A stretch of 55,699 bases of DNA from Aplysia californica (lineage: Eukaryota): positions 143,610 through 199,308 of the forward strand of contig NW_004798197.1 in NCBI RefSeq assembly GCF_000002075.1, given 5' to 3'. A program made the translations under genes and the position numbers. Positions 811 through 29,433 of this stretch are shown piece by piece. The notes under the pieces were generated by a model, which saw nothing but the letters and a program-made list of their open reading frames with translations, was not told the DNA's origin and made no database searches. Numbering within the stretch: position 1 is the first letter of the stretch; the number at the start of each line of letters is the position of its first letter.

Positions 811-2757
811 GTAGGTGAACTGACCCTAGATATCTAGATCTAGACTCTAGATCTAGATCTATTCTAGATCTAGATATAGATCTAGATCTAGATCTAGATC
901 TAGATCTTGCTTTTTGTGTTGCAATGAAATGTCAGCGAGGATCGAGTTAAGGAGATTGTAGAAAAAAAGGGCATGCTGATAGAACTCTCGCAGGAAATTA
1001 TTTCTGAGTGAAAATTGCTAGGTTATCATATCATGTCATTTGTTCTTGCCTACCAGAAGAAGACTATAACTTATAAGATGATGATGTTGGCTATTAATAC
1101 CAACTGCCAACGGCACGGCGATGCATAAAGCTGAGCTTAGGCTTAGGCCTCTACTCTCTTTTATGGCCACCTCGGAGTGAGAATAGTGCAGGCGAGTCTT
1201 GTGGCTATTCTCACCCGGTGCGCGTTCACCAAATTATTTTGCGTTCACCCTAAACCACAGAATTCTACACTGTGATAACAGAAAAATTGTAGAATTCTGT
1301 GCCGTGAACAAACGATCCATTACAACTGTAGCCTACTAAAACTAAAAGCATACAATTTTGTCTGTGGGCAGTGGAGAAAGAGAGAGAGGAGTAGCGCGAG
1401 AATTTCCGGGCAAAACAAAATGGCGACCCGCGTAGTTCGGCTCGATTCGAAAAGTTAAATAGCCGTAGCATCTTTGTAGACAACCAAATTAATTTACTTT
1501 TGTGTTTTAACATCATTTTTTAAACTTTGTTTTGGTCAATTTGATTGTCCACACCGATAGACAGTATTCAGAAAGAGACTAGAGAGAGAGAGAAGAGGGG
1601 AGGAGTTGATCTTGCGAGAACTTCCGGGCGGGTGAGAATAGCCACTTTCCTCTTTTATCTCAGAAAAATGCATGCTGGTTTTAGTCTGATGTATGATTAT
1701 AGAATAGATTATAATCTCAGTGTCTTTTCTGTTTCAGATACAAGAGGCATTAGCAGCTGGTAAAATCCAGCCTGGCCTGATAGTGGAAGCTCAGAAAAAA
1801 AATTTCATCGACAATAAGGTGAGCATTGTGTGCTGTTGATGTCAGCAAGTAGCTGAAGTGGTTGGGAAATTTTGTTGTTGTTGGTGTTTTTATGCCGTCA
1901 TCGATGAAATTTTAATCATCGCAGTGGCTATTTTTACGCTGAGCCGTAAAGATAGCCTCCCGGGCTATTTTTACTGCGAGCCGTAAAGATAGCCTCCAGG
2001 GCTATTTTTATGGCGGTCACAAACTGATGACGTAGAACACGTTTTTCATAGGGTTGGGTCGTGCTCGCACAATTAGCGTCCGCGAGTAACGAACTACTCG
2101 CTGGCACTGCTTGCAAAGGAGTGGACAGGTAACGAACCGTCCACTTGTGAAGAGCAGTTCGCTACACATCGGACAGAGACAACAGTTCGTTTAGCGAGCG
2201 AGCGGACGGGCGGACCGAGAGACTCCATGCAATCGAGCGGGTGGACGGACAGACGGGAGCGACTCCTTCCATTGCATACAACTTACAACCCCCCGCCCCA
2301 CCCCCCGAAAAAAAATTAATAAAAAAATCACCCTCCTGCCTCACACTGTAGCTAGGCGTTCTTGACGGAAATTCTCTCTCCCCCCCCGGCCTTTGAGATA
2401 ATTGGAACGTACACAGTGTGCCCCCACGCACGAGGTGAAAGGTTACACACATAGTACTACGTCACCAGCCTCTCTCACTTCCTGTGGCACCGCTAGTGGT
2501 TTGAAACATCAGGCCTTATTAACAAACAATAGACAACGGGTCTAATCTCACGTCGAGTATCTCGTCTGCTAGAGTTCGTCCGTTCGCCCGCCCGCCCAGT
2601 GAATAAAATTGTGGAGCGGACCCAAAAAACGAACTGACTTGAGGCTTGAGGTCCGCANNNNNNNNNNNNNNNNNNNNNNNNNNNNNNNNNNNNNNNNNNN
2701 NNNNNNNNNNNNNNNNNNNNNNNNNNNNNNNNNNNNNNNNNNNNNNNNNNNNNNNNN

Positions 2758-2813
<56 letters not shown>

Positions 2814-5800
2814 CAGAGATCTAGGAAGTTCTTGTTTTAGATAAAGATTGAAAGAGTGAGAGGGAGAAAGANNNNNNNNNNNNNNNNNNNNNNNNNNNNN
2901 NNNNNNNNNNNNNNNNNNNNNNNNNNNNNNNNNNNNNNNNNNNNNNNNNNNNNNNNNNNNNNNNNNNNNNNNNNNNNNNNNNNNNNNNNNNNNNNNNNNN
3001 NNNNNNNNNNNNNNNNNNNNNNNNNNNNNTTTATGCATATATTCGATGTTATACAGCTTTGTTTTTGTTTTTATTTGAAGGTAAAGCACATGTCTCAAGG
3101 TAGATCATGGTAGAATGGAGAACAGACATGGAACTCTGGACAAAGAGAAAAAGTATCATCAGTATTTTTTTTAGAAAGGATTAAGGATTCAATAGAGTAC
3201 GAAATCCCGAATTTGTACAAAATTGTAGGTTTTTTTTGGTTTGATTTAGTTCGTGTTTTACGGCGCTCCCAACTGCATAAGGTCTTATGAACGCGCGGGA
3301 GTAATTAAATAGTTTCAGCTTGGTAGCAATTAATTTTGAATTTTGCCCGAGTGACGACCGAAGCCTACTCTTTTGTAGATTTTGGACCACAGAGGAATCT
3401 TTAATGTGTGCAACTTGCACACGGGACCTCCGAACTGTTTTTGGCTAAGTGTTATATCTTACTTACGGTACCTTAAGAAAAGGGGTGTGGCTGAAAGACA
3501 GCAGTATGTAGTATGTAAGGACCAAGGATCAAGGAGGAGGAGGAGGAGGAGGAGGAGGAGGAGGGAACAAAAAAAGGGGGGGATGAGAGATGTAGGCAGA
3601 AGCTGGAGTCGAAAGCTGACAACAGAGCATGGCAGGAGAGCTGGAAAGGAGGTGAACGGAGAAAATTTCAGAGAGGAAAATTTTCCGTCCCGTCGGGTTT
3701 CGTACCCGGATCCTATTGAATGAGAGGCAAACACCATGACCTCTAGACCATAAGAGCCACTCCAAATTGTATTCTGTACACATGTATAGATCTACATCAT
3801 TTATGGAGTGGTTCACGTTACACGCACCATCTCTCTGTGGCCAACTTCTGCCCCACCTCACCCATCACGGGACTAGCCAATCACAACGCCGCATCGCTGA
3901 CTGCCTGTTTGGAGCCCACCTACAGCCCCGTCCCCCACCCCCCAGCTAGAGCTCGTTCGATCTCTCCCGCTGTATCCGAGTTTGGGACTGTCCTTGCCCC
4001 GCTTTATCCAAGCATAATTGAGTTTTCCTAGAGAAAAGGGGGATTCCGGTAAGGTCCCGCTGTAATAACGGGCGCCGCTGTAGTCATTATTCTATTGTAC
4101 CAAATGTGAAGCTATCTCATTTTCAGACCTTGATTCAATGATCGGATAATTTACTGTAATATTTTGCGTTTTTCCAAAAAAAACCCCAAAAAACAACAAA
4201 ATACCCCCCCCCCCAAANNNNNNNNNNNNNNNNNNNNNNNNNNNNNNNNNNNNNNNNNNNNNNNNNNNNNNNNNNNNNNNNNNNNNNNNNNNNNNNNNNN
4301 NNNNNNNNNNNNNNNNNTCTCACTCCTTGTGGCACCGCTAGGCTAGTGGCTTGAAACATTAGGCCTAATTAACAAACAAAGACCGTGGGCCTAACCTCGC
4401 GTCGAGTATCTCGTCTGCTAGAGTTCGTCCGTTTGCCCGCCCGCCCAGTGAATAAAATTGTGGAGCAGACCCAAAAAACGACCTGGCTTGAGATCTGCAG
4501 TCCGCTCGCTGAGAGTCAAATTATGGAGCGGACCCCAAAAAACGAACTGTCTTGAGGTTCGCAGTTCGCTCTCATGGCCGTCCGTTACCCGCTCGCTCTG
4601 ACTAAACTAATGTAACGTACTTTGAGCTGGTTAAAACCGAAAGTAAGACACTATAATTAAATGTCCTCTATTATTAGTATTTTCATAATTATAGTCTTTA
4701 TTCTGGACCTTGTTGTTGTGGGATTCTTTCAAATAATAAAATAGATCACATTTTTTAAGTTTTTGTGTTTTGTTTTCTAATGTGCTCATATTATTACTGT
4801 CCATTTTTACGGGGAACAGCTCACCCCAAGGGTGATTCTTTTTCCGATTCATATTTAGGAAAAAAAATTATACAGGCAAGAAATAATGGAGAAAGTAAAT
4901 TTTGATAAGTCCGAAAATATGAAAGTTGCCATGGAATGGAAACAGCACCAACATGCAAAACAAACAATAATTTTAAAAAACCGAAGGCTTCTTACTCTCT
5001 AACAAAATTGCATGAAAATTGGTGGATACTATGGTCAATCGTACTGAGCAAAATTTTGATATTTGAATGTAAAAAAACATATATATGTGTGTTCCTGTAC
5101 CCTGAAATTGCATCACAATAATTAATAGATTAATCATTGTGAACCAAAAAAATATATATTTTACACCTCTATCAAAAATCTGCTCAGTGCAAAGGAAGGA
5201 GGAACATTTTAAAGGCATTCCCAAGGCGAAAAGCGTTAACTCCAAAATGGCCGCCCTTCTTGTGAGTGTGGTACATGTAGTGATGTTGGTGAATGAGATG
5301 ATGATGCTGGCAGTGATGGTGGTAATGATAATGACGAGGTGATGGTGGTGATGATGATAAAGAGAGGGTGAATGATGATGGTGGGGAGAAGAAGGAAGAG
5401 GTGATGGTGGAGGAAGGGAGAAGGAAGATGAAGAAGAGAATAGAATGATGGTGAAGAGGAGGAAATTGAAAACCTATGGGGCTGTTCAAATATAATCTTA
5501 CCCTTTTCGGGACTTTTTTAAAACACAAAACCCNNNNNNNNNNNNNNNNNNNNNNNNNNNNNNNNNNNNNNNNNNNNNNNNNNNNNNNNNNNNNNNNNNN
5601 NNNNNNNNNNNNNNNNNNNNNNNNNNNNNNNNNNNNNNNNNNNNNNNNNNNNNNNNNNNNNNNNNNNNNNNNNNNNNNNNNNNNNNNNNNNNNNNNNNNN
5701 NNNNNNNNNNNNNNNNNNNNNNNNNNNNNNNNNNNNNNNNNNNNNNNNNNNNNNNNNNNNNNNNNNNNNNNNNNNNNNNNNNNNNNNNNNNNNNNNNNNN

Positions 5801-8800
5801 NNNNNNNNNNNNNNNNNNNNNNNNNNNNNNNNNNNNNNNNNNNNNNNNNNNNNNNNNNNNNNNNNNNNNNNNNNNNNNNNNNNNNNNNNNNNNNNNNNNN
5901 NNNNNNNNNNNNNNNNNNNNNNNNNNNNNNNNNNNNNNNNNNNNNNNNNNNNNNNNNNNNNNNNNNNNNNNNNNNNNNNNNNNNNNNNNNNNNNNNNNNN
6001 NNNNNNNNNNNNNNNNNNNNNNNNNNNNNNNNNNNNNNNNNNNNNNNNNNNNNNNNNNNNNNNNNNNNNNNNNNNNNNNNNNNNNNNTCAAAACGTTCAT
6101 CTCACAGAAGTGTCATATTTGGTTAACCTCCCCACCCAATCTTACACTTTTCTTACAGAAACCACCAAAGACACCCTTTCCCCTCTGAGGTATAAGTTTA
6201 TATTTTGAACGGCCCCTATAGGCCTAGATCTAATACATTGAGGCATGTCGTGTACATGAGAGGCGGACGTATGGTCGCTTTTCGAGGATCGCCGTAAAAA
6301 TAGCCTGGGAATCACCGGGAGGCTATCTTTACGGCTCGCCGTAAAAATAGCCACTGCGTTTAATCATTTAGGAGGTGAGTTTGACCCTGTCTGTCAAGGC
6401 CAGCTTGGGCTGAGAGGAAAACAACATCCTGGCAGAAAGACCAAAAGCCTTCATTGCCTTTTTCACCATACACCAGGTATAGACCACGGACAAACACTTT
6501 CTCACTCTGGACCAGGGTATAGGCCACGAACAAACACTTTCTCACCCTGCACCAGGGTATAGACCAAGGACAAACACTTCCATTACTTTGGCTAGCTTCT
6601 TCACATTATTCCGTGGAGAAATACCGGGATGCTCAATAAAAAAATTTCCTCACAGAGGTATTGAACTCAGGTCTTTTGTGTGTAACAGCAAAGCACCTAA
6701 CCGCCATGTCATAGAAGCCAGTTGGATAATTGTTTGTGTGTGAATGTTTGTCATACAGTCTGGCTCCTCACATTCTTGCTGACAGAATACCCACATTGCT
6801 GCTCACAGAATACTCGCACTGTTGCAGCGTGTAACACATGCCGATACAGCACCTGTGGGAACATGTGTGATGTGTGTAACACATGCTGATACAGTGTGTG
6901 TGGGAACATGTGTAGTGTGTGAAAATCTGGGTTTGCTGCAGGCATAAACTTGTCTGTTCAAGAGCGTAGTTCGCCCAGTGTGTTGACTTCACCTCTCTAC
7001 ATTGTGTGTTGCCAGCTGTACTCGCCTCATGTCAGTCTTCGCTTCCTGATTCTGACTAATCTGAGCTGGGGTCTTTATCAACTACTTATATATTATATAT
7101 GGCTGCTTTTGACTTGTCAGGGTTTGATGTTTTCTGTGCAAAGCCTCTTCACTCTGATCCCAGAGAAAAGGGCAATGTTCGTCTTTGCCTTTGAGCTGTA
7201 GAACGTGTCATTGATGTTGGAGCTGTAGAACATGTCACTGATTCCTTGAGTTGTAGAATGTCACTGACATCTTTGAACTGTAGAACATCATTGACATCTT
7301 TCTGTCCCCGTAATTTCATGAAAGAAAAATTTTGAAATTATGCAAATTGAGCCCAAAAATGTGAAATTATGCGATTCTGTTTATTTTAACTAAGAATGAT
7401 AACGGAAAGTAATCAGAAATTATGCAAAAAATGACCAAATTTTGCTAAATTATGCAGGGTACATAAAACCACGGGAACAGATCTTTGAGATTTAAAATTT
7501 CACTGACATCTTTGAGCTGTAGAACATGTCACTGACAGCCCGAAGGAGACTCTTATTCTAACTATTGTCAGCATGTAGCAAACTATTGACCTAACCTACT
7601 TTTCCGGTAAGCACATGATTACCATATTGGTTTATATATCATGTTCTTGGTCATCCCGTTACTTTCAGATGTCTGTGTATTCTTGGAATTTTCCTTTTGT
7701 GTAAATGAAATAAATCTTCCATCCTCAGGAGGGCTTGAGTGACAAAATACGAGAATTTTCCCTTGACAAAATGAAATGGATAGAGAGATTGGAGTTGACA
7801 AACAACCCTGCACCATCCATCGATGCACTTACCAGTGAGGGAAATGAAGACGACGACTTCAACAGGGAGATGAGATTGTGAGTACTCATGACTTGTGTTG
7901 ATTCATACATTTCTTCAATAGGCTTTTTTCTTTTTCTTAAACCTTTCTTGGAATCAAGGAATCTGTAAGCTTTAGTTTGTTACTTAATCTTAATCTGCCA
8001 GGGTCCTGGAGACTGATATTTTTGCCCAAACTCTGATTTTTATGGGAAGATGATAAAGAAAACTATTTTTGGTTTTTGAGTGGTTAGCTGGTCTGCATTG
8101 AGTTCTCTTTATGAATGACAATATTTTTCAGTAGCTGTTATTTTGAGCATGTTTTTCTGTTTGTTCCTGCCAGCTATCGCCAGGCTCAAGCCTCAGTGCT
8201 TGAAGGCCTTGCCAGATTGGCCAAACTGTCGGTGCCGACCAAGAGACCCGAGGACTATTTCGCCGAGATGGCCAAGTCGGACGAGCACATGAAGAAAGTG
8301 AGTCTGTGATCCCCACGCTCGTGTCCACCCACATATCACATGCCTGCGGGTCACGCTCTTTGCTTAGTGGATAACTCTTGACTTTGCCTTAGATTGTCTT
8401 TCAAACATGCATGTAATCAAAGATTTCGAGATTTTCTATAACAAATTAGGTACAATTTGGGTTTCTTTTTTATCGACCTTCTTCTTGTTTCTTCCCAGAT
8501 GCTGATATTGTAATGTTTTTACCAGCTAACTCTGTACTGTTTAGTCACTGACGTGATTTTCTGTCTTACACTTACAATGAAGTTGTCTGTTTGGTCAGAT
8601 ATTCTCATGTGCTAAAGATTTCCGTTACAAAATGTTTCTCCAATGCCTGATAAGTGGGAGAGCTGTTGAAGCATTGCAGAACCATTCCAATGTTGTATGG
8701 TTTTACGAATAATGGATTTTCGTCTCATTTCTCTCAACCCAGAGTAAAATTAGACTATATTGTATTTAAATATTGTTGAGGTAAATACAGAAATACTTCA

Positions 8801-18422: not shown

Positions 18423-21400
18423 CTGTCGGGAAGATGGGTCGAGGAAACAGTCAATTACATGAGTGTGTTGTATGTGTGTGTGTGTGTCAGTGTGTGTGGA
18501 TGGGGGGGAGGTGGGTGATGACGAAAATTTTCAAGGTGAAGGTCAAGAAACTGGCATTTTTCCACAGGTTTTGGAATTGTTATCGAATTTTTGTTTTTTG
18601 GCTCAACACCTCTCATGCCCATAAAAGAACATTCTCAAAATATCTGTGAGTATTTTACTGAAAAACGTTGATTAGAGGCATAAAAGATGTGTTTTCAGTT
18701 TCAAGGGACTCTCCAGCTAAGGAAATAACTCAACTTTGGTGGCCATTTTCTTGCTAATTTCACCTCTTAAACCAGCCCCCCCCCCCCCCCCCCCCCCAAC
18801 ACCTCTTTCACCTTGTAAATGACTTGTGCTCAAGATAAATGGATATTTTTTTCATCAAAATCAAGGCAAATGGACAGGCTTTGAGATCACACTAGCAACT
18901 ACACATGCCCAAAAATTGACAAGAGCCTGATTCCACCACATCCTGACACATATACAGTCGAACCTGTGTAAGACGGAATCACAAGGGAGCCAGAAATAAA
19001 TTCCGTCTTAGACAGGGGAATTTAGGGGGAGATGGACGGGGGTGTGGGTTCAAAGGTCCAGCCGGTGGGATCAAGGATCCAGTCGGCAAGCAATGGTCAA
19101 AACTTCACACCTTTCAATAGCTGTCCTGTTTGATAATGACATGTATCAGTCTTCCTAATCCAATTACCACAGTACTTGCTTGTTTGAACTATTAAAAACA
19201 AACATTTCAACATCTCCTTTGCTTCCACCCTTAGCCCCACCCACTGGTGTAACAAGCACAGTCAACCAATGCCACCCTTCACTGCCATGTAACAACGATT
19301 CGATGGGAACTCTTTTCACGGTTGGCTGTACGATCAGGGCGCATTGGTCAATCTAATTTCATACACTCTCACGAGCAGTTGTGAGATTTCAAACCCACAC
19401 CACCCAGACCATCTGCATCCCTCGGGGCTCACATGACGGGGTAACATTAACATCTATCCCCAAATTGCACCCCTACTCCCCTTCCTTGCCCAGCAGCATG
19501 GCCATGGCGTTAAGTTTAGAGCCAGCGGAACCAAACTTGCGAGTTTTGTCTTAGACAGGTGAAACTCTCGGAAGAGAGCGGATTTTTCTTTCTGTTTCCG
19601 CATTGGACAGGTTTCCATTAAGGCAGGTTCGACTGTACATAAATTTTTTTCTAATGTCGGGACCTGAAAACTTGTTGGCTAGGTGCGGGCTGGACTGTGA
19701 TTGTACAAGTAATTCTGACATAAACAATTCTGTTTGCAATTTTCACAAATAATCTGAGATGTCGCTACACCTTGTACTTCAGTTACAACTCCATGTCATG
19801 GGATCTAAGTTAAATGTTTTCTTTTTGTTGTCAGATCACAGTTTGCTATCAGATATTACACGTTTTGTACTAACGGTCTACTGATCACATTTTTTGTACC
19901 AACATACCAGGGGTCTGCTGATCCAGCCATATTCCTGGGCCTCTGTCTGGGGGAAGGTGTATTTCTTCACTGGCTCTTGGTTGGCTCGCTTGATCACCTT
20001 CAGGAAATGAGCTGTGGAGGAAAGTTTAACAAAATAGATACGCCCTGTGTGCATCGCAACTCCCCTAACCCAAATGTACACTGCTATATATATATATATA
20101 TAGAGAGAGAGAGACCCCCAGTCTTGGTTCTCAAACCATGTTTTCTGACATACTATGTTCTTGTTCAGATTTTACATTGCTGTAACAAAGTTCAAAGCCA
20201 GTCTCTGTACCTTAACTTTCAAATCAAACTGTCTCCACATAAAGGAAAATAAAGGATGGCAAGACCCAAAGATTAGGTGAAACTGAAAGAAATTACTTTG
20301 TACAGGAATCATATAAAAAAACAAATCAAATTTTGTTGAGATAACCTTTTTGAGGATACAACAAGACAAGTGAGCAAATATTTCGTTCATCAGGAACAGA
20401 AAGGAAATTTTAATTTTAGATCAAAGACTTTTTTTTTTTCACTTTAGTTAAGACTTTTACTATCACTTTGCTTTGGGCATCTGTTGAACAATAGACAAAC
20501 ATTCAAGTAATCTCATGACTGTTACCAAACGATAGTGAAGAAGTTATGCATTTAAATAGAGCATTTTAGATCATTTGAAACTGTGTTAAGTCTTAAGAAT
20601 TAAGTGCTATCACAAAATATTCAGACAGACAGTTCCCCTCTCTAAGATATATATAGATAGTCAATTTTTACTTTCATCCATCAAACTCCAATCATCGTCA
20701 TCATCTTGTGATATAAGTAGGCCTATTTCTGTTATTTTTATAGCATGAACCATCAGAATACCGCGGGCTACTCTCAGGAAACTGATTGTTGTCAGGTCGC
20801 TGTTCAAATGTGTTATGTCCAGAAAGAAATTTTTTTTCAGGAGAGAGAAAAAAACTGTTTCATTCTTTTAACAATTGTACCAAATAATGGGTTTTTTCCT
20901 TGCTTTTTTCTACATTTAGATTTTGAATTTCAAAAAAATATTTCTTGAGCACATGCAAACAATGAACCAATGTACCACACACGGCGTCCGAAATTCCGTC
21001 TCAGCGATCTTTTAGTTAGTCCGGGCCCCCCGCGGTAGGCCATAAATTAGCGGCAGGTGACCTGCAATTTCACGCGTCAAGTCGGGGATTGACCGGGGTC
21101 AACTCGTGCACAGCGCTGTCCTATCTTGTCCTTATCAGAACGCGTTTCTTCCCCTAATTTCATGAGCCGTAAAATGATGCTCACTCTACTCCTAGAACCT
21201 ATTTCTTCACCAATTCCGCTTCGTCTACGTCTTCTTGATATCTTGTGAAAGTTTCAACAGTTTTCATTGATTCGTTTGGGAATAATAACAGGTTTAAATT
21301 GTGAGTGTTAAGTGATTGGAAGCGCCGATAATAATGTTATCTCTTCAAATTTAATTACAAATCATTCGAGAATGGAACGATGGTCTTTATTTCTGTTTGC

Positions 21401-24400
21401 ACGGTGTGATAGCCATCAAATCATATTTTCTAATGATATGAATTTTGTTTTTCCAGCACTTTGCAGTGACTGGCTATCAGTTAGTGAATTGTGTTCCTAA
21501 GTAAAAATCGTTAAACTGCAATGGGCCAGTCACACATATGAGAGGCATAGAGTCTCTGAATGAACTTGGTCGTGTGTGTTGGCGTTTAAATTTAACTGTC
21601 AAACAAAACAAGTACAGAAAGCCCCGACTATGTAAGACAATAGCAGGAGATATTCTCTTGGTTTATGGGATTGATGTGAGGGACGAAAATGAACAGTCGT
21701 ATTCCGCTAACATTTGTGTCAAGTGTTTTACCGCGATTTCAACTATCAAAAGGAGATATGGTGTTACGTCACGTCAATTCATGCCGCAAAAAAGCAGTTG
21801 ACACTAGTAGGAACATGTGGTGTGCGTTTGACAATAGCAGAAATGTGAATTCCTTCTCCGTTTTGTCGGTACCGCTTAGGTGGCTGCATACAAAGATCAA
21901 TTTCAAGCTAACATCGTAAAACACCCCAAACATACCTCCCTCCATCCCCATGTATGCAAGGAACTAACAAACACAATTTGTACAGAAACAAGAAAATACT
22001 CCGTCGAAACTGCAAAAATTGAGGAGGCAAAAGGAATGGAAGCAATATTCAATCTTCTCAATGAAAGATTTAGCCATGTTCACACTGCAATATCAAATCT
22101 CAAACCAGTCGAACGATTTTCAGTTCCACAAATCTTCTTAGCAATCGACAATTACATGTCCGCATTCAGACGCTATTTCCCCGCAAAGTTATCCAAAAGC
22201 CACACATATCATAACAACACTGTATTCCACACATACAACAACACATGTTTGCTCTCGGGCGTTTAGGAGAACAGGACACAGAAAGCAGTCACCAAGTGAT
22301 CTCAAAACTGGAAGCCAGAGTATGAAGGATCCCAAACCAGATAGACATAATGCGTTTTATTTTTGTGTCGCATCTCCTGCAAATAGCTCCCTCATTGCGT
22401 GCTGCTGGATATGTTTAGAAAGAAAAATTGTATAAATGTATACTTTTATTCTGTACATGTTCATTTCGTGAAAAGAAATCGGTGCTGTATATTGAAGATA
22501 CGTCAGTATATCATTATTCAGGAGGATACACATTCCATTGGATACAAAAAGTCATGAATGCAGGGAAGCGTTTTGGCTATCATGCTCATGACAAGTTCCA
22601 TGTTCGTGCTGGAAACAAAATTTTGAGTGAGTCAATTTCTAAACACATTTTCCTGTCTTACGTGGCAGTTTTGTAAATATTTATCGTTAGGCTTATAAGT
22701 TATTAGCCATTCAATATGTGTTTGTTGTTTTGACTAACTATAAATAGACATACATTTTAAGAGCATCTAACTCCAAAACGTGAGCAGCCATGGTATTGCT
22801 ATTTCATACCAATAAAGAGGTTTAGTTGCTTTCTCTAAAGAACAAACTTGTGTTCCCGTATGATATTTTTTTTGTGTGTAAGACGATAAAACATGTGTTG
22901 AAAAATTCATTTCACCGGCTACTGACGCAGGTAGCGGGAGGGCGGGTTAGTGACCTCTGGGTGACCGGCCCGCCGTGACCCGGTCACTCCATCGCCGATC
23001 CAACTAAAAGAGCGCTGTTTGTACGCCGTGCACAGATTAAGAAACCACACACACATAAAAATTTTTAATGTTGGGCTTAGTGCATCTGAACAGCTGTCCG
23101 ACATTATATGTATCTACCTTAATCCTATCCGTACGTCATGTGCTACTATCATATCCATACGACGTGGGGAACTCTGTACCACCACTTTCCAAAGAGGAAA
23201 TTTACTCGTTAATTCGATCTGTACACTTTGCATCAGTCTGTCAAAATGACTTTTTGAGAAAAACTGAAAGCTTCAAAGAGATCTTCGTACTAGAAGTATT
23301 CTTAAACGTGAAGAATACAACCCCCAGGGGTACAAAATGACCCCAGGGTGTACGGATAGGGTTAAACATATTATCACTGCAAACAACAATTTGTTCATTC
23401 ATAAATTATCAGATGCATGTAACTGTTGGTCTATTTGTCAATGCAAGCATATCCACGTCAGCAAGCTGTTCAAATGTCCTAGGCCAGAAAGAACAATTTC
23501 TTCTCCAGGGAGATAAATAAATTGTTGCATTTGTTTGACAATTGTACCCATTTTGTGCATCTTTTCTTGCTTTTTTCAACATTTATACATTTTATCACAT
23601 ATTTCTAGAGCTCATGCAACGAATAACACAGATAGATTAAGAAACTGCAATAAAACGAACATTTCAAAATCTTGGGCTTATTAGGCTTATATTTGAAAAG
23701 CTGGTCAATGATATGAATTACGTGAGGATGTGTAAGAGAGTGTGTGTGTATGGGTGTGCGTGCATGTGCACGTACTGTGTATGGGAGTCATGTGGATTTG
23801 TTGAAATACAAAACTAATGAGCCAGTATCTTCACAATAAATTTTTTATCTTAATCCCTAAAACTTAAATTCTCTGCATCCTGCTAACCATCCTTGTCTCT
23901 CTTCACTTTTTCTCCATTCTTACATCATCTAATTTTGATGGTATGATGAGATTGTTAATATTTTTAAAATTCAGAGTTCCGCAACCCTACCTATTGTTAT
24001 TGTTATTGAGTAAACAAAGGAAAAGAAGTCAAATAAAAATCAACTTTATCTCTCAAAACTTTTCTTACTTCTTTCCACTCAAGATGCCATGAACTCTGTC
24101 TTTAAAATAAAGTGTGTGTGACACAACCTTCAGCATAACTGCCTCTAACAAAAAGGTGATATGTTGACTCACCATCTTCTTCTCCTTCAGCAGTATCGTG
24201 TGTTGAGTTTGGTTTGCCGGCTAAAACATACACTGTAGAAAAAAAAAAGAAGCAAGTCTAATTTGTGCTCTTAAATTCATTTAAAATAAGAGCCTTAGCG
24301 TAAGAAACACATAAACAACATTATAAAACAAATTTTAAAAACCCACACAAATTTAATAAATAATAAACCTGATCTGCACTAATGCTTTAAAAATGTTAAT

Positions 24401-27400: not shown

Positions 27401-29433
27401 CTAAGACTGGTGCCCGGGCTATAATTTTGGCATCACGATAAAACAAAGTCGAATAGACTACAAAATCGCGTTTCAAAACTGAACCTAAATTTCCGATTTT
27501 CAGTGGAAATGCTTGACCCGGAAGTCAACATTATATTATTACCTTTATTTTAACATGGATATGTGGATTGGAATAGAATCTAAGCTAAAATTGAAGATCG
27601 GTTCTCGAGCCGCCGCGGCTCGGCGTAGCGAATGAGTTAAGGACCAGCAAGCTGACCCAGATTTCGAGGATTTCCAGAAATCTTGACCTACACCAAAAGT
27701 GGGTAGGCTATTGCCCTACCCAGATCTAGAGTAATCGTACCGGGTCGGGCAGCACATTTTTTTTTAGCTGTCGGGCACTGGAGTACAAAAAGATCGTTTA
27801 AAACTTTGTTTTTAAATCTAGCCTCAAAAGAGTGGCACACAAACCTAAAGCAACCTCCCTTACTTTTGTTGAAACAACAGTAACGGCGATATTTTGTTAA
27901 AAATAGTCCTTAAGACAGCTTTTTCTTCATCAACTGAGCAAAACAGCGTGAAGCTCTTTCCCTGGAAGAGTTAACATTGGTTGTGGATGAAGGAGCCTGT
28001 GGCCTAGATTCCTCGTTTTGGTAAACTCTGAAAGCTGGAGAGTTATTTGCATATGAGGCCCCATCAAGGATGAAAGAGAATTTCAGGTCAGCCTCGCCGT
28101 TTTTGCCCAAAGGGGGGGTGCCCGGATTGTAACATAAAATCCGTAGTTTCTCATCCTTCGGGCACATAAGATAATATAGTGCCAATGGTTATATAATAAA
28201 GAATCAAGAATTTGAGCCTAATTTAAATAATAGTAGAGTCAGATACAGCATATTAGCTCAGTCAGACACCAGGGTAGTAAAGTCAGATACCAGCGTGTAA
28301 TACAGTCGGATATTAGAGTAGCAGAGTCAGATACCAGTGTAGTTGAGTGAGCCAGATGCCAGTGTAGTAGAGTCAGATACCACGTTGTAGAGTGGGTCAG
28401 ATACATACTCATTAAAATAGCTATAAATGGTGAAAACCACTTCAGACAAACTATCATTGTGTCCAAGTGTTGATAACAAGCATTAAAAATCATGTTATTA
28501 AGCTTGCAAAGAAACAAATGTGATAACAATTGAAAATGACCGAATGTCAAAATACTGCCCAAATCCATGAGAAAACAAAAAAAATGTGTCCGAACTCGTA
28601 AATAAATCGGGTGTCACTTTTGCACCCAGTAAGGGCCTCAAATATGAGAACAAGTTGAAACAGGTCATTCCTGGGGTCATCCAATCACAGGACTTCCTGT
28701 AGCTGGTTTCGGTTTGTCTCTAGGGCAAGGCAGATAGGAGATATAAAGCTTTAAAGTCGACGTGCCTGTTTTCGTCCTTATTTTGACCGAACCGGTAATT
28801 TTACTCTAGAGGAATTTGGTTTCGTTGGAGTGTATATCTGTTTAGTAAAAACTCTCCTTGTCTTTTAAAGAAACTGAACGAGGGGGAAAAACTTTACCTT
28901 CAATTTTCTCAAAACAGCATTTTTCGGGATAGCCCCCTTATGCTTAAAAGCGACCATTGATCTAGACTCTAGATCTATATTATAAAAATTATATCGAGGC
29001 TAGAAGTCTAGCATCGCAGTTAAATCTAGATTCTAGATCTAGATATCTAGAGTCTAGATCTAGATATTGTTCAAATTGGGAAAAAAAATATCGTCACATC
29101 ACAAATGAAAACAGATTAAACAGAAAAGGACATTGTAAAAATTAAGACACAACTTTAATTTTATATTATCAATTGTCAATTGACTCTAGAATCTAGATCT
29201 AGATCTAGACTTGAAACTAACTTAGACTTGATCCTTTCAACAAAGTGTCAAAGGTAATGCCCTGAATAGCACTGGGCATATTTAAAAGTAATCTCACTTT
29301 TCTTGAAAGGATTGATCCCATAGTTAGTGAAGATTCTTTGAGTTCGGTGTTCTTTTTTAATTGTTTCACACAGAATATCATTCTGATGAACGAAGTTTAC
29401 AGGTTCCTTCTCTGTTTGCTTCGCCGCCGCCAT
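18309..29433 (-). CDS. CFAP144: Cilia- and flagella-associated protein 144 / FAM183 family, spliced gene, 137 aa
   Basis: complement(join(18309..18422,19908..20011,24173..24232,29298..29433)). GT-AG introns with consistent phases. Contains FAM183-like motifs VHQNDILCETIKKE, YGINPF, KKYTFPQTEAQEYGWIS and SITKYMDAAW. Confidence 0.9.
18955..19635. mobile_element. Tc1/pogo-like MITE
   Basis: TA|CAGTCGAACCTG ... CAGGTTCGACTG|TA. Confidence 0.82.
19908..20011 (-). CDS. CFAP144: CFAP144 coding exon 3
   Basis: HFLKVIKRANQEPVKKYTFPQTEAQEYGWISRPL. Confidence 0.92.
20980..23030 (+). mobile_element. Chapaev-type (RAG1-N-terminal-related) DNA transposon, internally deleted
   Basis: Termini CACGGCGT..ACGCCGTG; 4-bp TSD caca (20976-20979, 23031-23034); decayed transposase remnants at 21521-22418. 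Confidence 0.8.
21521..22418 (+). pseudogene. Decayed Chapaev/Transib-like transposase (N-terminal zinc finger joined to C-terminal catalytic end)
   Basis: N-terminal SLNELGRVC...ILLVYGIDVRDE...ICVKC resembles RAG1 LCRIC..IAKVFRIDVKAD..FCHNC. After a frameshift: KVIQKPHIS*QHCIPHI...LGRLGEQDTESSHQ. Several stops and frameshifts. Confidence 0.72.
23123..23361. mobile_element. 239-bp piggyBac-like MITE (second copy, opposite orientation)
   Basis: TTAA flanks; same length and internal sequence as 11672-11910. Confidence 0.88.
24173..24232 (-). CDS. CFAP144: CFAP144 coding exon 2
   Basis: MYVLAGKPNSTHDTAEGEED; poly-T..tacag acceptor, gtgagt donor, phase 1-1. Confidence 0.87.
24955..25619. mobile_element. 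Tc1/pogo-like MITE
   Basis: TA|CAGTGGA..TCCACTG|TA with degenerate longer TIRs. Confidence 0.7.
26689..27636. mobile_element. 948-bp piggyBac-like MITE
   Basis: TTAA TSD; perfect TIR CTCATTCGCTACG. Confidence 0.85.
28232..28403. repeat. ~20-bp minisatellite (agtagagtcagataccag)
   Basis: Directly visible. Confidence 0.8.
28960..29215. repeat. Degenerate (TAGATC)n cluster
   Basis: Visible at the start of CFAP144 intron 1. Confidence 0.8.
29298..29433 (-). CDS. CFAP144: CFAP144 coding exon 1
   Basis: MAAAKQTEKEPVNFVHQNDILCETIKKEHRTQRIFTNYGINPFKK; aaaATGG start context; gtgaga donor. Confidence 0.9.

What the first reader, a model, noticed from the sequence alone, without database searches (positions are those of the whole stretch)
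20980..23030. RAG1-related (Chapaev-type) transposon remnant inside CFAP144 intron 2
Seen: CACGGCGT..ACGCCGTG termini and a perfect 4-bp TSD (caca). A decayed ORF begins H..SLNEL(C>G)RVC...ILLVYGIDVRDE...ICVKC...WCAFD..NS(C)SV(C). A later frame reads HI..HCIPHI...LGRLGEQDTESSH. Known: Chapaev transposons have CAC..GTG ends, 4-bp TSDs and an N-terminal zinc finger related to the RAG1 N-terminus (molluscan N-RAG-TP is such an element). The H..H..E-x-x-x-ES segment resembles the zinc-binding and catalytic-Glu end of Transib/RAG1-type cores (RAG1 HKTLAH..SEGNES). Inference: an internally deleted copy of a possibly undescribed family relevant to RAG origins. The central core (probably more than 1 kb) is missing.
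Basis: partly seen in the sequence, partly recalled or inferred. Interest (0 to 1): 0.8.

Follow-up and report, generated by a model that had tools for sequence, protein, structure and literature searches.

The report
Deleted Chapaev (RAG1-like) transposon copy
This is one copy of a 2-kb cut-and-paste transposon family that has lost the middle of its gene; its full-length relatives encode an enzyme folded like RAG1, the antibody-gene recombinase. The kind is already known, but this copy inserted recently and its ends have an RSS-like long/short layout.

Summary
Window 20980-23030 is a 2051-bp element with CACGGCGT...ACGCCGTG ends and a CACA target-site duplication (TSD). The genome holds at least 40 copies, and 26 of 28 checked copies have perfect 4-bp TSDs.

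The coding remnants match about 900-aa transposases at residues 39-111, 738-824 and 820-894. About 560 aa of core is missing, and every copy shares that deletion. It is therefore a non-autonomous family, not a one-off relic.

Full-length relatives carry the Chapaev hallmarks: C(2)C, LH and H(4)H motifs, DUF1280 and an N-terminal zinc finger.
- A profile of the zinc finger hits the RAG1 N-terminus (E 3.3e-7).
- An AlphaFold model of the core (pLDDT 96.7) matches only RAG1, amphioxus RAG1-like (BbRAGL) and Transib structures (E down to 2e-12).

Chapaev, its Chapa domain and Aplysia N-RAG-TP are all published.

Two additions:
- Contigs from two other samples carry the exact empty site, so this insertion is polymorphic and the family was recently mobile.
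- In six diverged families the 5' end has 24-27 nt and the 3' end 15-16 nt between the heptamer and a conserved TTTAGTT motif. The scan also filed this asymmetry separately (s1-680753).

The parts
20976..20979 (.). Target-site duplication, left copy (CACA)
   Evidence: The empty-site contigs keep a single CACA, shown as 4 letters that fit either side of the joint.
20980..21017 (+). 5' terminal inverted repeat, long form: heptamer CACGGCG (20980-20986), 24 nt, then TTTAGTT (21011-21017)
   Evidence: The same 38-mer marks other copies genome-wide.
21018..21531 (+). 5' non-coding leader of the element
   Evidence: No homology to transposase proteins. It is shared by all copies.
21532..21862 (+). 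Decayed Chapa-type N-terminal zinc finger. 21556-21771 in frame +1 matches P0003 residues 39-111. The tail at 21779-21862 is in frame +2.
   Evidence: tblastn E 1e-13. More than 150 related stretches lie in the genome, and 348 relatives are in the protein library.
21897..21930 (+). Approximate internal deletion junction. About residues 175-737 of a full-length transposase are absent.
   Evidence: Similarity to the longer relative L060 stops at element position 917, which is window 21896. The next protein match starts at 21931 with residue 738.
21931..22191 (+). Remnant of the C-terminal helical region of the transposase (P0003 residues 738-824), frame +1
22176..22400 (+). Remnant of the H(4)H zinc site and GEQxxE catalytic-Glu segment through to the end of the ORF (P0003 residues 820-894). 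Frame +3, with two stop codons inside.
   Evidence: 49% identity over 75 residues.
22401..22992 (+). 3' non-coding part of the element
   Evidence: Shared by all copies, with no protein match.
23002..23030 (-). 3' terminal inverted repeat, short form. Read inward: heptamer CACGGCG (23030-23024), 15 nt, then TTTAGTT (23008-23002).
   Evidence: The same 29-mer marks other copies.
23031..23034 (.). Target-site duplication, right copy (CACA)
19902..20021 (-). Host exon, FAM183/CFAP144 (Pfam positions 48-87)
   Evidence: 48.8 bits, above the cut-off.
29272..29379 (-). Host exon, FAM183/CFAP144 (Pfam positions 1-37)
   Evidence: 29.4 bits, above the cut-off.

Best explanation
Window 20980-23030 is one copy of a non-autonomous Chapaev-type DNA transposon family.

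**Origin.** The founder arose from a full-length element of about 4.2-4.9 kb by one internal deletion of about 1.7 kb. The deletion removed the NBD-like (nonamer-binding-domain-like) region and the RNase-H catalytic core. It kept both ends, the N-terminal Chapa zinc finger and the last ~160 codons.

**Spread (inferred).** The deleted form cannot make transposase. It was copied around the genome in trans by a RAG1-like transposase from autonomous relatives that the same genome still holds as long open frames. That enzyme is inferred to recognise the CACGGCG heptamer and a distal TTTAGTT motif, cut at the CAC ends, and insert with a 4-bp staggered cut.

**This copy.** It landed in an old repeat inside a CFAP144/FAM183 intron, antisense to the gene. 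The landing was recent enough that the empty allele still segregates. The copy has no coding capacity and no shown host function.

**Shown:** family, ends, TSDs, the deletion, homology, fold of relatives, polymorphism.
**Inferred:** trans-mobilisation, which transposase did it, and the roles of the two end motifs.
For: **Family and ends.**
- At least 40 copies share the same boundaries.
- 26 of 28 have perfect 4-bp TSDs.
- Mean pairwise divergence is 3.8%, and the nearest neighbour of each copy is 0.7-1.5% away.

**Deletion.** The remnants align to P0003 residues 39-111, 738-824 and 820-894 only. The longer relative L060 diverges from the element at position 917.

**Full-length relatives.**
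- 348 proteins share the finger, many of them 830-1030 aa with DUF1280.
- The columns GGDHG, GDY-x17-CxxC, PPYLH and H-x4-H...GEQGxE are conserved.
- Complete elements L064, L066 and L067 carry CACNG ends and TSDs CGCT, ATTA and AGAT.

**RAG1 link.**
- The finger profile hits the RAG1 N-terminus at E 3.3e-7.
- The core model has pLDDT 96.7. Its top 49 Foldseek hits are all RAG1, BbRAGL or HzTransib, and the next hit is at E 0.09.

**Possible transposase sources.** The genome holds open frames of 906-993 aa. At C19 a kin with 80% finger identity sits next to a family-like 5' end.

**Recent insertion.** Empty-site contigs occur in two runs of another study. Paralogues of both flanks are at most 87% identical.
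Against: - No intact autonomous element with matching ends was read for this exact family.
- The closest full-length proteins in hand are only about 44% identical in the finger.
- The window ORF and the L060 finger, searched alone, do not reach RAG1. The Pfam RAG1 core model finds nothing in the genome. The RAG1 link therefore rests on profiles and a predicted structure of relatives.
- The empty-site contigs have low depth (about 3) and come from runs of unstated library type.
- Literature classification is split. Chapaev is placed in CMC (Yuan and Wessler, cited in PMC4079192) or in the Transib superfamily (PMC4411706).
Confidence: 0.9

Rival explanations
1. It is a Transib or RAG-like (RAGL) transposon relic, a direct member of the lineage that gave rise to RAG1-RAG2, rather than a Chapaev.
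For: The heptamer CACGGCG is close to Transib and RSS heptamers. The core of relatives folds like RAG1. The N-terminal finger is shared with RAG1. The ends are asymmetric in length, as in RAGL-A (PMC10462144).
Against: TSDs are 4 bp rather than 5 bp in 26 of 28 copies and in three full-length relatives. Full-length relatives hold one ORF, with no room for a RAG2-like gene. The Pfam RAG1 core model finds nothing in the genome. Sequence identity to RAG1 in the structural matches is 12-14%. The C(2)C, LH and H(4)H motif set is the published Chapaev signature (PMC4079192).
Confidence: 0.05
2. It is a one-off decayed relic: a full-length element that inserted here and was deleted in place, long dead.
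For: The ORF is broken by frameshifts, stop codons and lost cysteines.
Against: All of the 40 or more copies share the same deletion and boundaries, each with its own TSD. The deleted form itself therefore transposed. The nearest copy is 1% different, and the empty allele still exists.
Confidence: 0.02
3. The element, or its short zinc-finger ORF, has been taken over by the host, for example as an intronic regulator of CFAP144 or as a finger-only protein of the N-RAG-TP kind.
For: Many library proteins are finger-only fragments of 100-250 aa. N-RAG-TP was described as a RAG1 N-terminus-like element only (PMC8355894). One 87-aa frame is open in this copy.
Against: The insertion is polymorphic. 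The first zinc-binding Cys is mutated and the last CxxC is lost. Copies differ in which frames are open. No expression data were examined.
Confidence: 0.03

Closest known systems
Chapaev DNA transposons (Kapitonov and Jurka 2007; CMC group of Yuan and Wessler 2011; placed in the Transib superfamily by Kapitonov and Koonin 2015, PMC4411706)
   Same: CAC..GTG termini and 4-bp TSDs. DDE transposase with C(2)C, LH and H(4)H motifs. N-terminal Chapa zinc finger shared with RAG1, and some relatives add a RING finger (P0241, P0243). Non-autonomous deletion derivatives are common.
   Different: Nothing that defines the group differs. This 2051-bp family was not matched to a named Repbase entry, because Repbase is not available here. 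I found no description for Chapaev of the conserved long/short end layout or of the NBD-like domain.
N-RAG-TP of Aplysia californica (Panchin and Moroz 2008, as summarised in PMC8355894)
   Same: A molluscan mobile element whose ORF resembles the RAG1 N-terminal region. The window family keeps exactly that part. From memory, the genome's size and contig count match the Aplysia californica assembly; this is unverified.
   Different: Identity with the published N-RAG-TP sequences could not be checked, because the paper is not held. Here the finger-only state is shown to be a deletion derivative of a full RAG1-like transposase, not a separate kind of element.
RAG1, RAG-like (ProtoRAG/RAGL) and Transib transposases
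   Same: The predicted core fold of relatives matches mouse RAG1, BbRAGL and HzTransib structures and nothing else. The spacing Asp-x19-CxxC and H-x4-H followed by Glu matches my recollection of RAG1 (D708/C727/C730, H937/H942, E962); that numbering is from memory. The N-terminal finger aligns to RAG1 99-184. The ends have a heptamer and a distal A/T-rich motif with a spacer difference of about 10 bp, as in RSS and RAGL-A TIRs (PMC10462144).
   Different: TSDs are 4 bp rather than 5 bp. There is no RAG2-like partner. Identity to RAG1 is only 12-14%. The Pfam RAG1 core model does not detect the family. A GQP motif stands where the HMM alignment places RAG1's GRP.
CACTA/EnSpm and Mirage (the other CMC groups)
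   Same: CAC-type termini and short TSDs.
   Different: The termini are CACGG rather than CACTA. TSDs are 4 bp, against 3 bp for CACTA and 2 bp for Mirage (from memory; PMC4079192 gives 3-4 bp for Chapaev, and the 2026 preprint read gives 2-4 bp for CMC). The Chapa finger is present.

Membership tests
Chapaev | Terminal inverted repeats ending 5'-CAC ... GTG-3' | tested here: met
   Searches show this in 28 copies. Full-length relatives L064, L066 and L067 show it too.
Chapaev | Target-site duplication of 3-4 bp | tested here: met
   26 of 28 copies have perfect 4-bp TSDs. Three full-length relatives carry CGCT, ATTA and AGAT. The empty site confirms 4 bp.
Chapaev | DDE transposase with conserved C(2)C, LH and H(4)H motifs | tested here: met
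   These are invariant or near-invariant columns in alignments of 11 and 80 relatives. The window copy keeps only the H(4)H and Glu part, and that part is broken.
Chapaev | N-terminal Chapa zinc finger related to the RAG1 N-terminus | tested here: met
   Remnant at 21532-21862. Family profile against RAG1: E 3.3e-7. Pfam RAG1_imp_bd is above its cut-off in P0121 and at C198.
Transib / RAG-like transposons | 5-bp target-site duplication | tested here: not met
   TSDs are 4 bp throughout.
Transib / RAG-like transposons | RAG1-type catalytic core fold | tested here: met
   Only for full-length relatives, and by predicted structure: Foldseek E 2e-12 to RAG1, 9e-9 to BbRAGL, 7e-7 to HzTransib. The window copy lacks the core.
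RAG-like transposons (RAGL) | Linked RAG2-like kelch gene | tested here: not met
   L064 (4174 bp) and L066 (4881 bp) each hold one transposase gene. L066 has an extra 116-aa call carrying a zinc-finger-associated domain (Pfam zf-AD); I read it as the transposase's own N-terminal finger. Neither element has room for a second long ORF.
N-RAG-TP | Identity or close similarity to the published Aplysia sequences | not testable with these tools
   The paper is not held and no reference sequence is available.
CACTA/EnSpm | CACTA termini and 3-bp TSD | tested here: not met
   The termini are CACGGCG and the TSD is 4 bp.

The most novel reading that the evidence does not exclude
Chapaev-type elements may obey a 12/23-like rule. 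They have no RAG2 partner and make 4-bp TSDs, yet the two ends carry the same heptamer and the same distal TTTAGTT motif. The spacer is about one helical turn longer at the 5' end: 24-27 nt against 15-16 nt. This holds in six families whose spacers are otherwise unalignable, and in hundreds of genomic ends.

The transposase has a helical domain placed like RAG1's nonamer-binding domain. If the enzyme needs one long and one short end for synapsis, the structural basis of the 12/23 rule predates the RAG1-RAG2 partnership. It could then be tested in a family that was recently mobile.
Probability: 0.4. Interest if true: 0.8.

Novelty: new member of a known kind. Interest (0 to 1): 0.55.

Why it matters
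As annotation, this is an ordinary intronic transposon copy of a published superfamily. It earns a second look for three reasons.

1. It gives a tool-based confirmation that a Chapaev lineage really has a RAG1-type core and a RAG1-type N-terminal finger. The literature still files this group in two different places.
2. The family moved recently enough to be polymorphic. An active RAG1-like transposase may therefore still be obtainable from this mollusc.
3. Its ends share the long/short heptamer-spacer-motif layout of recombination signal sequences. That makes the question "how old is the 12/23 asymmetry?" directly testable outside the RAG1-RAG2 lineage.

Tried and rejected
**Searches that found nothing useful.**
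- Pfam on the six window ORF pieces gave nothing significant; the best was zf-AD at E 0.016.
- On the longer relative's finger, RAG1_imp_bd reached only E 0.41.
- A word-index protein search with the 312-aa ORF of copy L051 gave no hit.
- Pfam RAG1 core (PF12940) against the whole genome gave no hit, and the control genomes gave none either, so this says little.
- Single-sequence searches of the finger against PDB sequences did not reach RAG1. Only family profiles did.
- Foldseek with the N-terminal model gave no hit below E 0.3. The ZAD-like and NBD-like matches are moderate, at Z 4.6 and 6.1-6.7.
- Rfam found nothing in the window.

**Steps that were blocked.**
The autonomous partner of this family was therefore not read.
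- The Panchin and Moroz 2008 paper is not held.
- P0193 is not on record, and P0048 and P0240 came without DNA.

**Left unresolved.** The ends of three further relatives (L068, L069, L070) could not be resolved.

**Deliberately not done.** I built no consensus of the family. All comparisons used individual copies.

**Rejected readings.** Chance ORF, in-place decay of a unique copy, a CACTA element, and a RAGL element with RAG2L.
Full report
**1. What is in the sequence**

The stretch 20980-23030 begins CACGGCGT and ends ACGCCGTG, with CACA on both sides. Beyond the 8-bp perfect repeat, the two ends share a second block: CAGCG-N-TCTTTTAGTT. It lies 9 nt further in at the left end than at the right end.

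The quoted peptide strings are present. An 87-aa frame at 21538-21798 holds the CxxC-type pairs, with the first Cys changed to Gly. Its continuation in another frame has lost the last CxxC. The H..H..GEQDTESSH string lies in a third frame.

**2. It is a repeat family with real transposon ends**

A DNA search of the window's own genome (927,310,431 bases, 4332 contigs) found 42 matches. Most cover positions 1-2051 at 90-99% identity.

In the 28 fetched copies that retain both ends, the boundaries are the same to the base. 26 of them are flanked by a perfect 4-bp duplication, each of a different sequence.

Mean pairwise divergence among the 28 copies is 3.8%. The nearest neighbour of each copy is typically 0.7-1.5% away, and the nearest copy to the window copy differs by 1.0%.

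**3. The coding remnants and the deletion**

The 87-aa frame has more than 150 related stretches in the genome. Some sit inside open frames of 800-940 aa.

One longer relative, L060, is broken by an assembly gap that I left as it is. It matches the element only up to position 917 and then continues as an open frame. Its 200-aa N-terminal part found 348 proteins in the exhaustive library search, among them proteins of 830-1030 aa.

Against the 900-aa protein P0003, the window aligns at three places only:

| Window | Frame | P0003 residues |
|---|---|---|
| 21556-21771 | +1 | 39-111 |
| 21931-22191 | +1 | 738-824 |
| 22176-22400 | +3 | 820-894 |

About residues 175-737 are absent, which is roughly 1.7 kb. 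Because every copy has the same structure, the deletion happened once in a founder, and the deleted form then spread.

**4. What the full-length relatives are**

All ten long relatives tested carry Pfam DUF1280, except P0076, whose middle carries other domains. The N-terminus of P0121 passes the Pfam RAG1_imp_bd cut-off. One locus in this genome, C198, does so too.

A word search with the core of P0003 gave 106 relatives. The named ones come from Plakobranchus, Elysia, Nucella and Littorina, which I know as gastropods, and from Amphiura, a brittle star. Two of them have a RING finger after the N-terminal domain.

Alignments show conserved GGDHG, GDY followed 19 residues later by CxxC, PPYLH, H-x4-H and GEQGxE. 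These are the C(2)C, LH and H(4)H motifs given as diagnostic of Chapaev, together with CAC..GTG ends and 3-4-bp TSDs (PMC4079192). The N-terminal "Chapa" finger and the occasional RING are described for Chapaev and linked to RAG1 in PMC4411706.

**5. Test of the RAG1 relation**

- **Sequence.** A profile of 11 full-length relatives has a 137-aa RAG1 N-terminal fragment (21wb_A) as its best PDB hit, at E 3.3e-6. A finger-only profile, whose first row is the window family's own relative L060, gives E 3.3e-7 to that fragment. It gives E 3.8e-4 to full-length mouse RAG1 residues 99-184. Single sequences do not reach RAG1.
- **Core structure.** An AlphaFold model of P0003 residues 395-900, built with 80 relatives, has mean pLDDT 96.7 and pTM 0.93. 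Its 49 Foldseek hits at E 0.001 or better are all RAG1 (best E 2e-12, TM 0.62), amphioxus BbRAGL (9e-9) or HzTransib (7e-7). The next hit is at E 0.09.
- **N-terminal structure.** The model of residues 24-400 has a confident finger, a disordered linker and an ordered helical part. Model residues 250-361 align to RAG1 393-511, the nonamer-binding domain and the start of the next domain, at Z 6.1-6.7. That is moderate on its own but collinear with the core match. The first half of the finger resembles ZAD domains at Z 4.6.

The Pfam RAG1 core model does not detect anything in the genome. The link is therefore remote and rests on profiles and predicted structure.

**6. Complete elements elsewhere**

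Contigs encoding relatives gave complete elements:

| Locus | Span | Length | TSD | Heptamer |
|---|---|---|---|---|
| L064 | 2376-6549 | 4174 bp | CGCT | 5' CACAGCG / 3' CACGGCG |
| L066 | 1757-6637 | 4881 bp | ATTA | CACGGCG |
| L067 | 2132-6312 | 4181 bp | AGAT | CACGGTA |

Each holds a single transposase gene with no space for a RAG2-like gene. L061, the contig of P0003, starts exactly at CACGGCGT. L062 and L063 have recognisable ends but no clean TSD.

**7. Recent mobility**

I laid contigs of four public runs on 20600-23400. One contig in X14 and one in X16 (two samples of a 2023 study) join 20975 to 23031. They skip 2055 bases, which is the element plus one TSD. Four letters fit either side of the joint, the flanking sides are 84-85 nt, and there are 0-1 mismatches.

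Both flanks belong to old repeats, but their paralogues in the assembly are at most 87% identical over comparable lengths. The contigs therefore represent the empty allele of this locus. Their depth is low and the library type is not stated.

**8. Possible transposase sources**

The genome has open frames of 940, 941, 906 and 993 aa that match the core.

At C19, three features lie in the order and spacing of a full-length element:
- a 38-nt 5' end of the window-family type;
- a finger 80% identical to the window ORF;
- a 514-aa open core frame.

I could not read these loci.

**9. End architecture**

In all six families with both ends resolved, the 5' end is long and the 3' end is short. The figures are the number of nt between the heptamer and [T/C]TTAGTT:

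| End | Six families |
|---|---|
| 5' end | 24, 25, 25, 25, 25, 27 |
| 3' end | 15, 15, 15, 15, 15, 16 |

The spacers are not alignable between families. The extra segment differs from family to family in sequence, and its length ranges from 9 to 11 nt.

Genome-wide, the pattern CACGGCG-N(8-32)-TTTAGTT occurs 737 times, against 104 for the reversed control. Of the first 100 listed:
- 44 are 29-30 nt long;
- 46 are 38-39 nt long;
- 3 are small variants of the long form;
- 7 look unrelated.

A second non-autonomous family of about 1.55 kb, and a 272-bp element, each pair one long end with one short end. Where the finger ORF is known, the long end lies upstream of it. Two neighbouring loci on C3 are the exception.

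A length asymmetry of about 10 bp is published for RAGL-A and some RAGL-B transposons (PMC10462144). I found no such statement for Chapaev. Whether the asymmetry is required for transposition is inference.

**10. Context**

Pfam FAM183 (CFAP144) matches two minus-strand exons at window 19902-20021 and 29272-29379. The element lies between them, antisense, in an old repeat.

**11. Verdict**

The finding is correct in observation and in its main reading. The kind is known: Chapaev, the Chapa domain and molluscan N-RAG-TP. I cannot say whether this family has a name. The scan also noted what may be another copy of this family elsewhere in the genome (s1-691460); I did not check it. The added value is the structural confirmation, the polymorphic insertion and the conserved long/short ends.

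Noticed in passing
window 23138-23400: A very abundant repeat starts about 100 bp downstream of the element. Summed contig depth there is about 660,000 in run X1, against 15-30 for unique flank.
   Followed up: no
window 20788-20979: The insertion site lies inside an old interspersed repeat. There are at least 1247 candidate copies, and the best are 78-87% identical.
   Followed up: partly
G000:C8:525275-526854 and many others (for example C12:3021731-3023320, C4:2148870-2150469): A second, more numerous non-autonomous family of about 1.55 kb has the same heptamer and TTTAGTT motif. It always pairs one 39-nt end with one 29-nt end.
   Followed up: partly
G000:C7:1588895-1589166: A 272-bp miniature element pairs a 39-nt long end with a 30-nt short end of a third family.
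   Followed up: no
G000:C3:342615-342643 and C3:345818-345846: Two neighbouring loci have the short (29-nt) end upstream of the finger ORF. This is an exception to the 5'-long rule. Their sequence equals the long form of a sister family minus one 10-nt tandem unit.
   Followed up: no
L061:1-3117: The contig encoding the 900-aa P0003 starts exactly at the CACGGCGT terminus and ends in an A-run just after the stop codon. It may be a transcript-derived contig.
   Followed up: no
P0156, P0182, P0184, P0211, P0224, P0235: Several Plakobranchus ocellatus database proteins named "amine oxidase" are Chapaev-type transposase fragments. The name looks like an annotation error.
   Followed up: no
Pfam PF06918 (DUF1280) on P0003 residues 323-493 and relatives: This family of unknown function covers the region just before and into the RAG1-like catalytic core of these transposases. 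DUF1280 therefore appears to be part of a RAG1/Transib-type transposase.
   Followed up: partly
P0003 residues 38-110 (model residues 15-87): The first half of the Chapa / RAG1 N-terminal finger resembles insect ZAD domains. Evidence: VIA-align Z 4.6 with rmsd 3.0 over 64 residues; weak Pfam zf-AD hits; and a profile hit to 7po9_A at E 0.11.
   Followed up: partly
L060:1135-1236 (G000:C367): An assembly gap interrupts a longer relative of the window family, just after the point where the 2-kb family's deletion begins.
   Followed up: no
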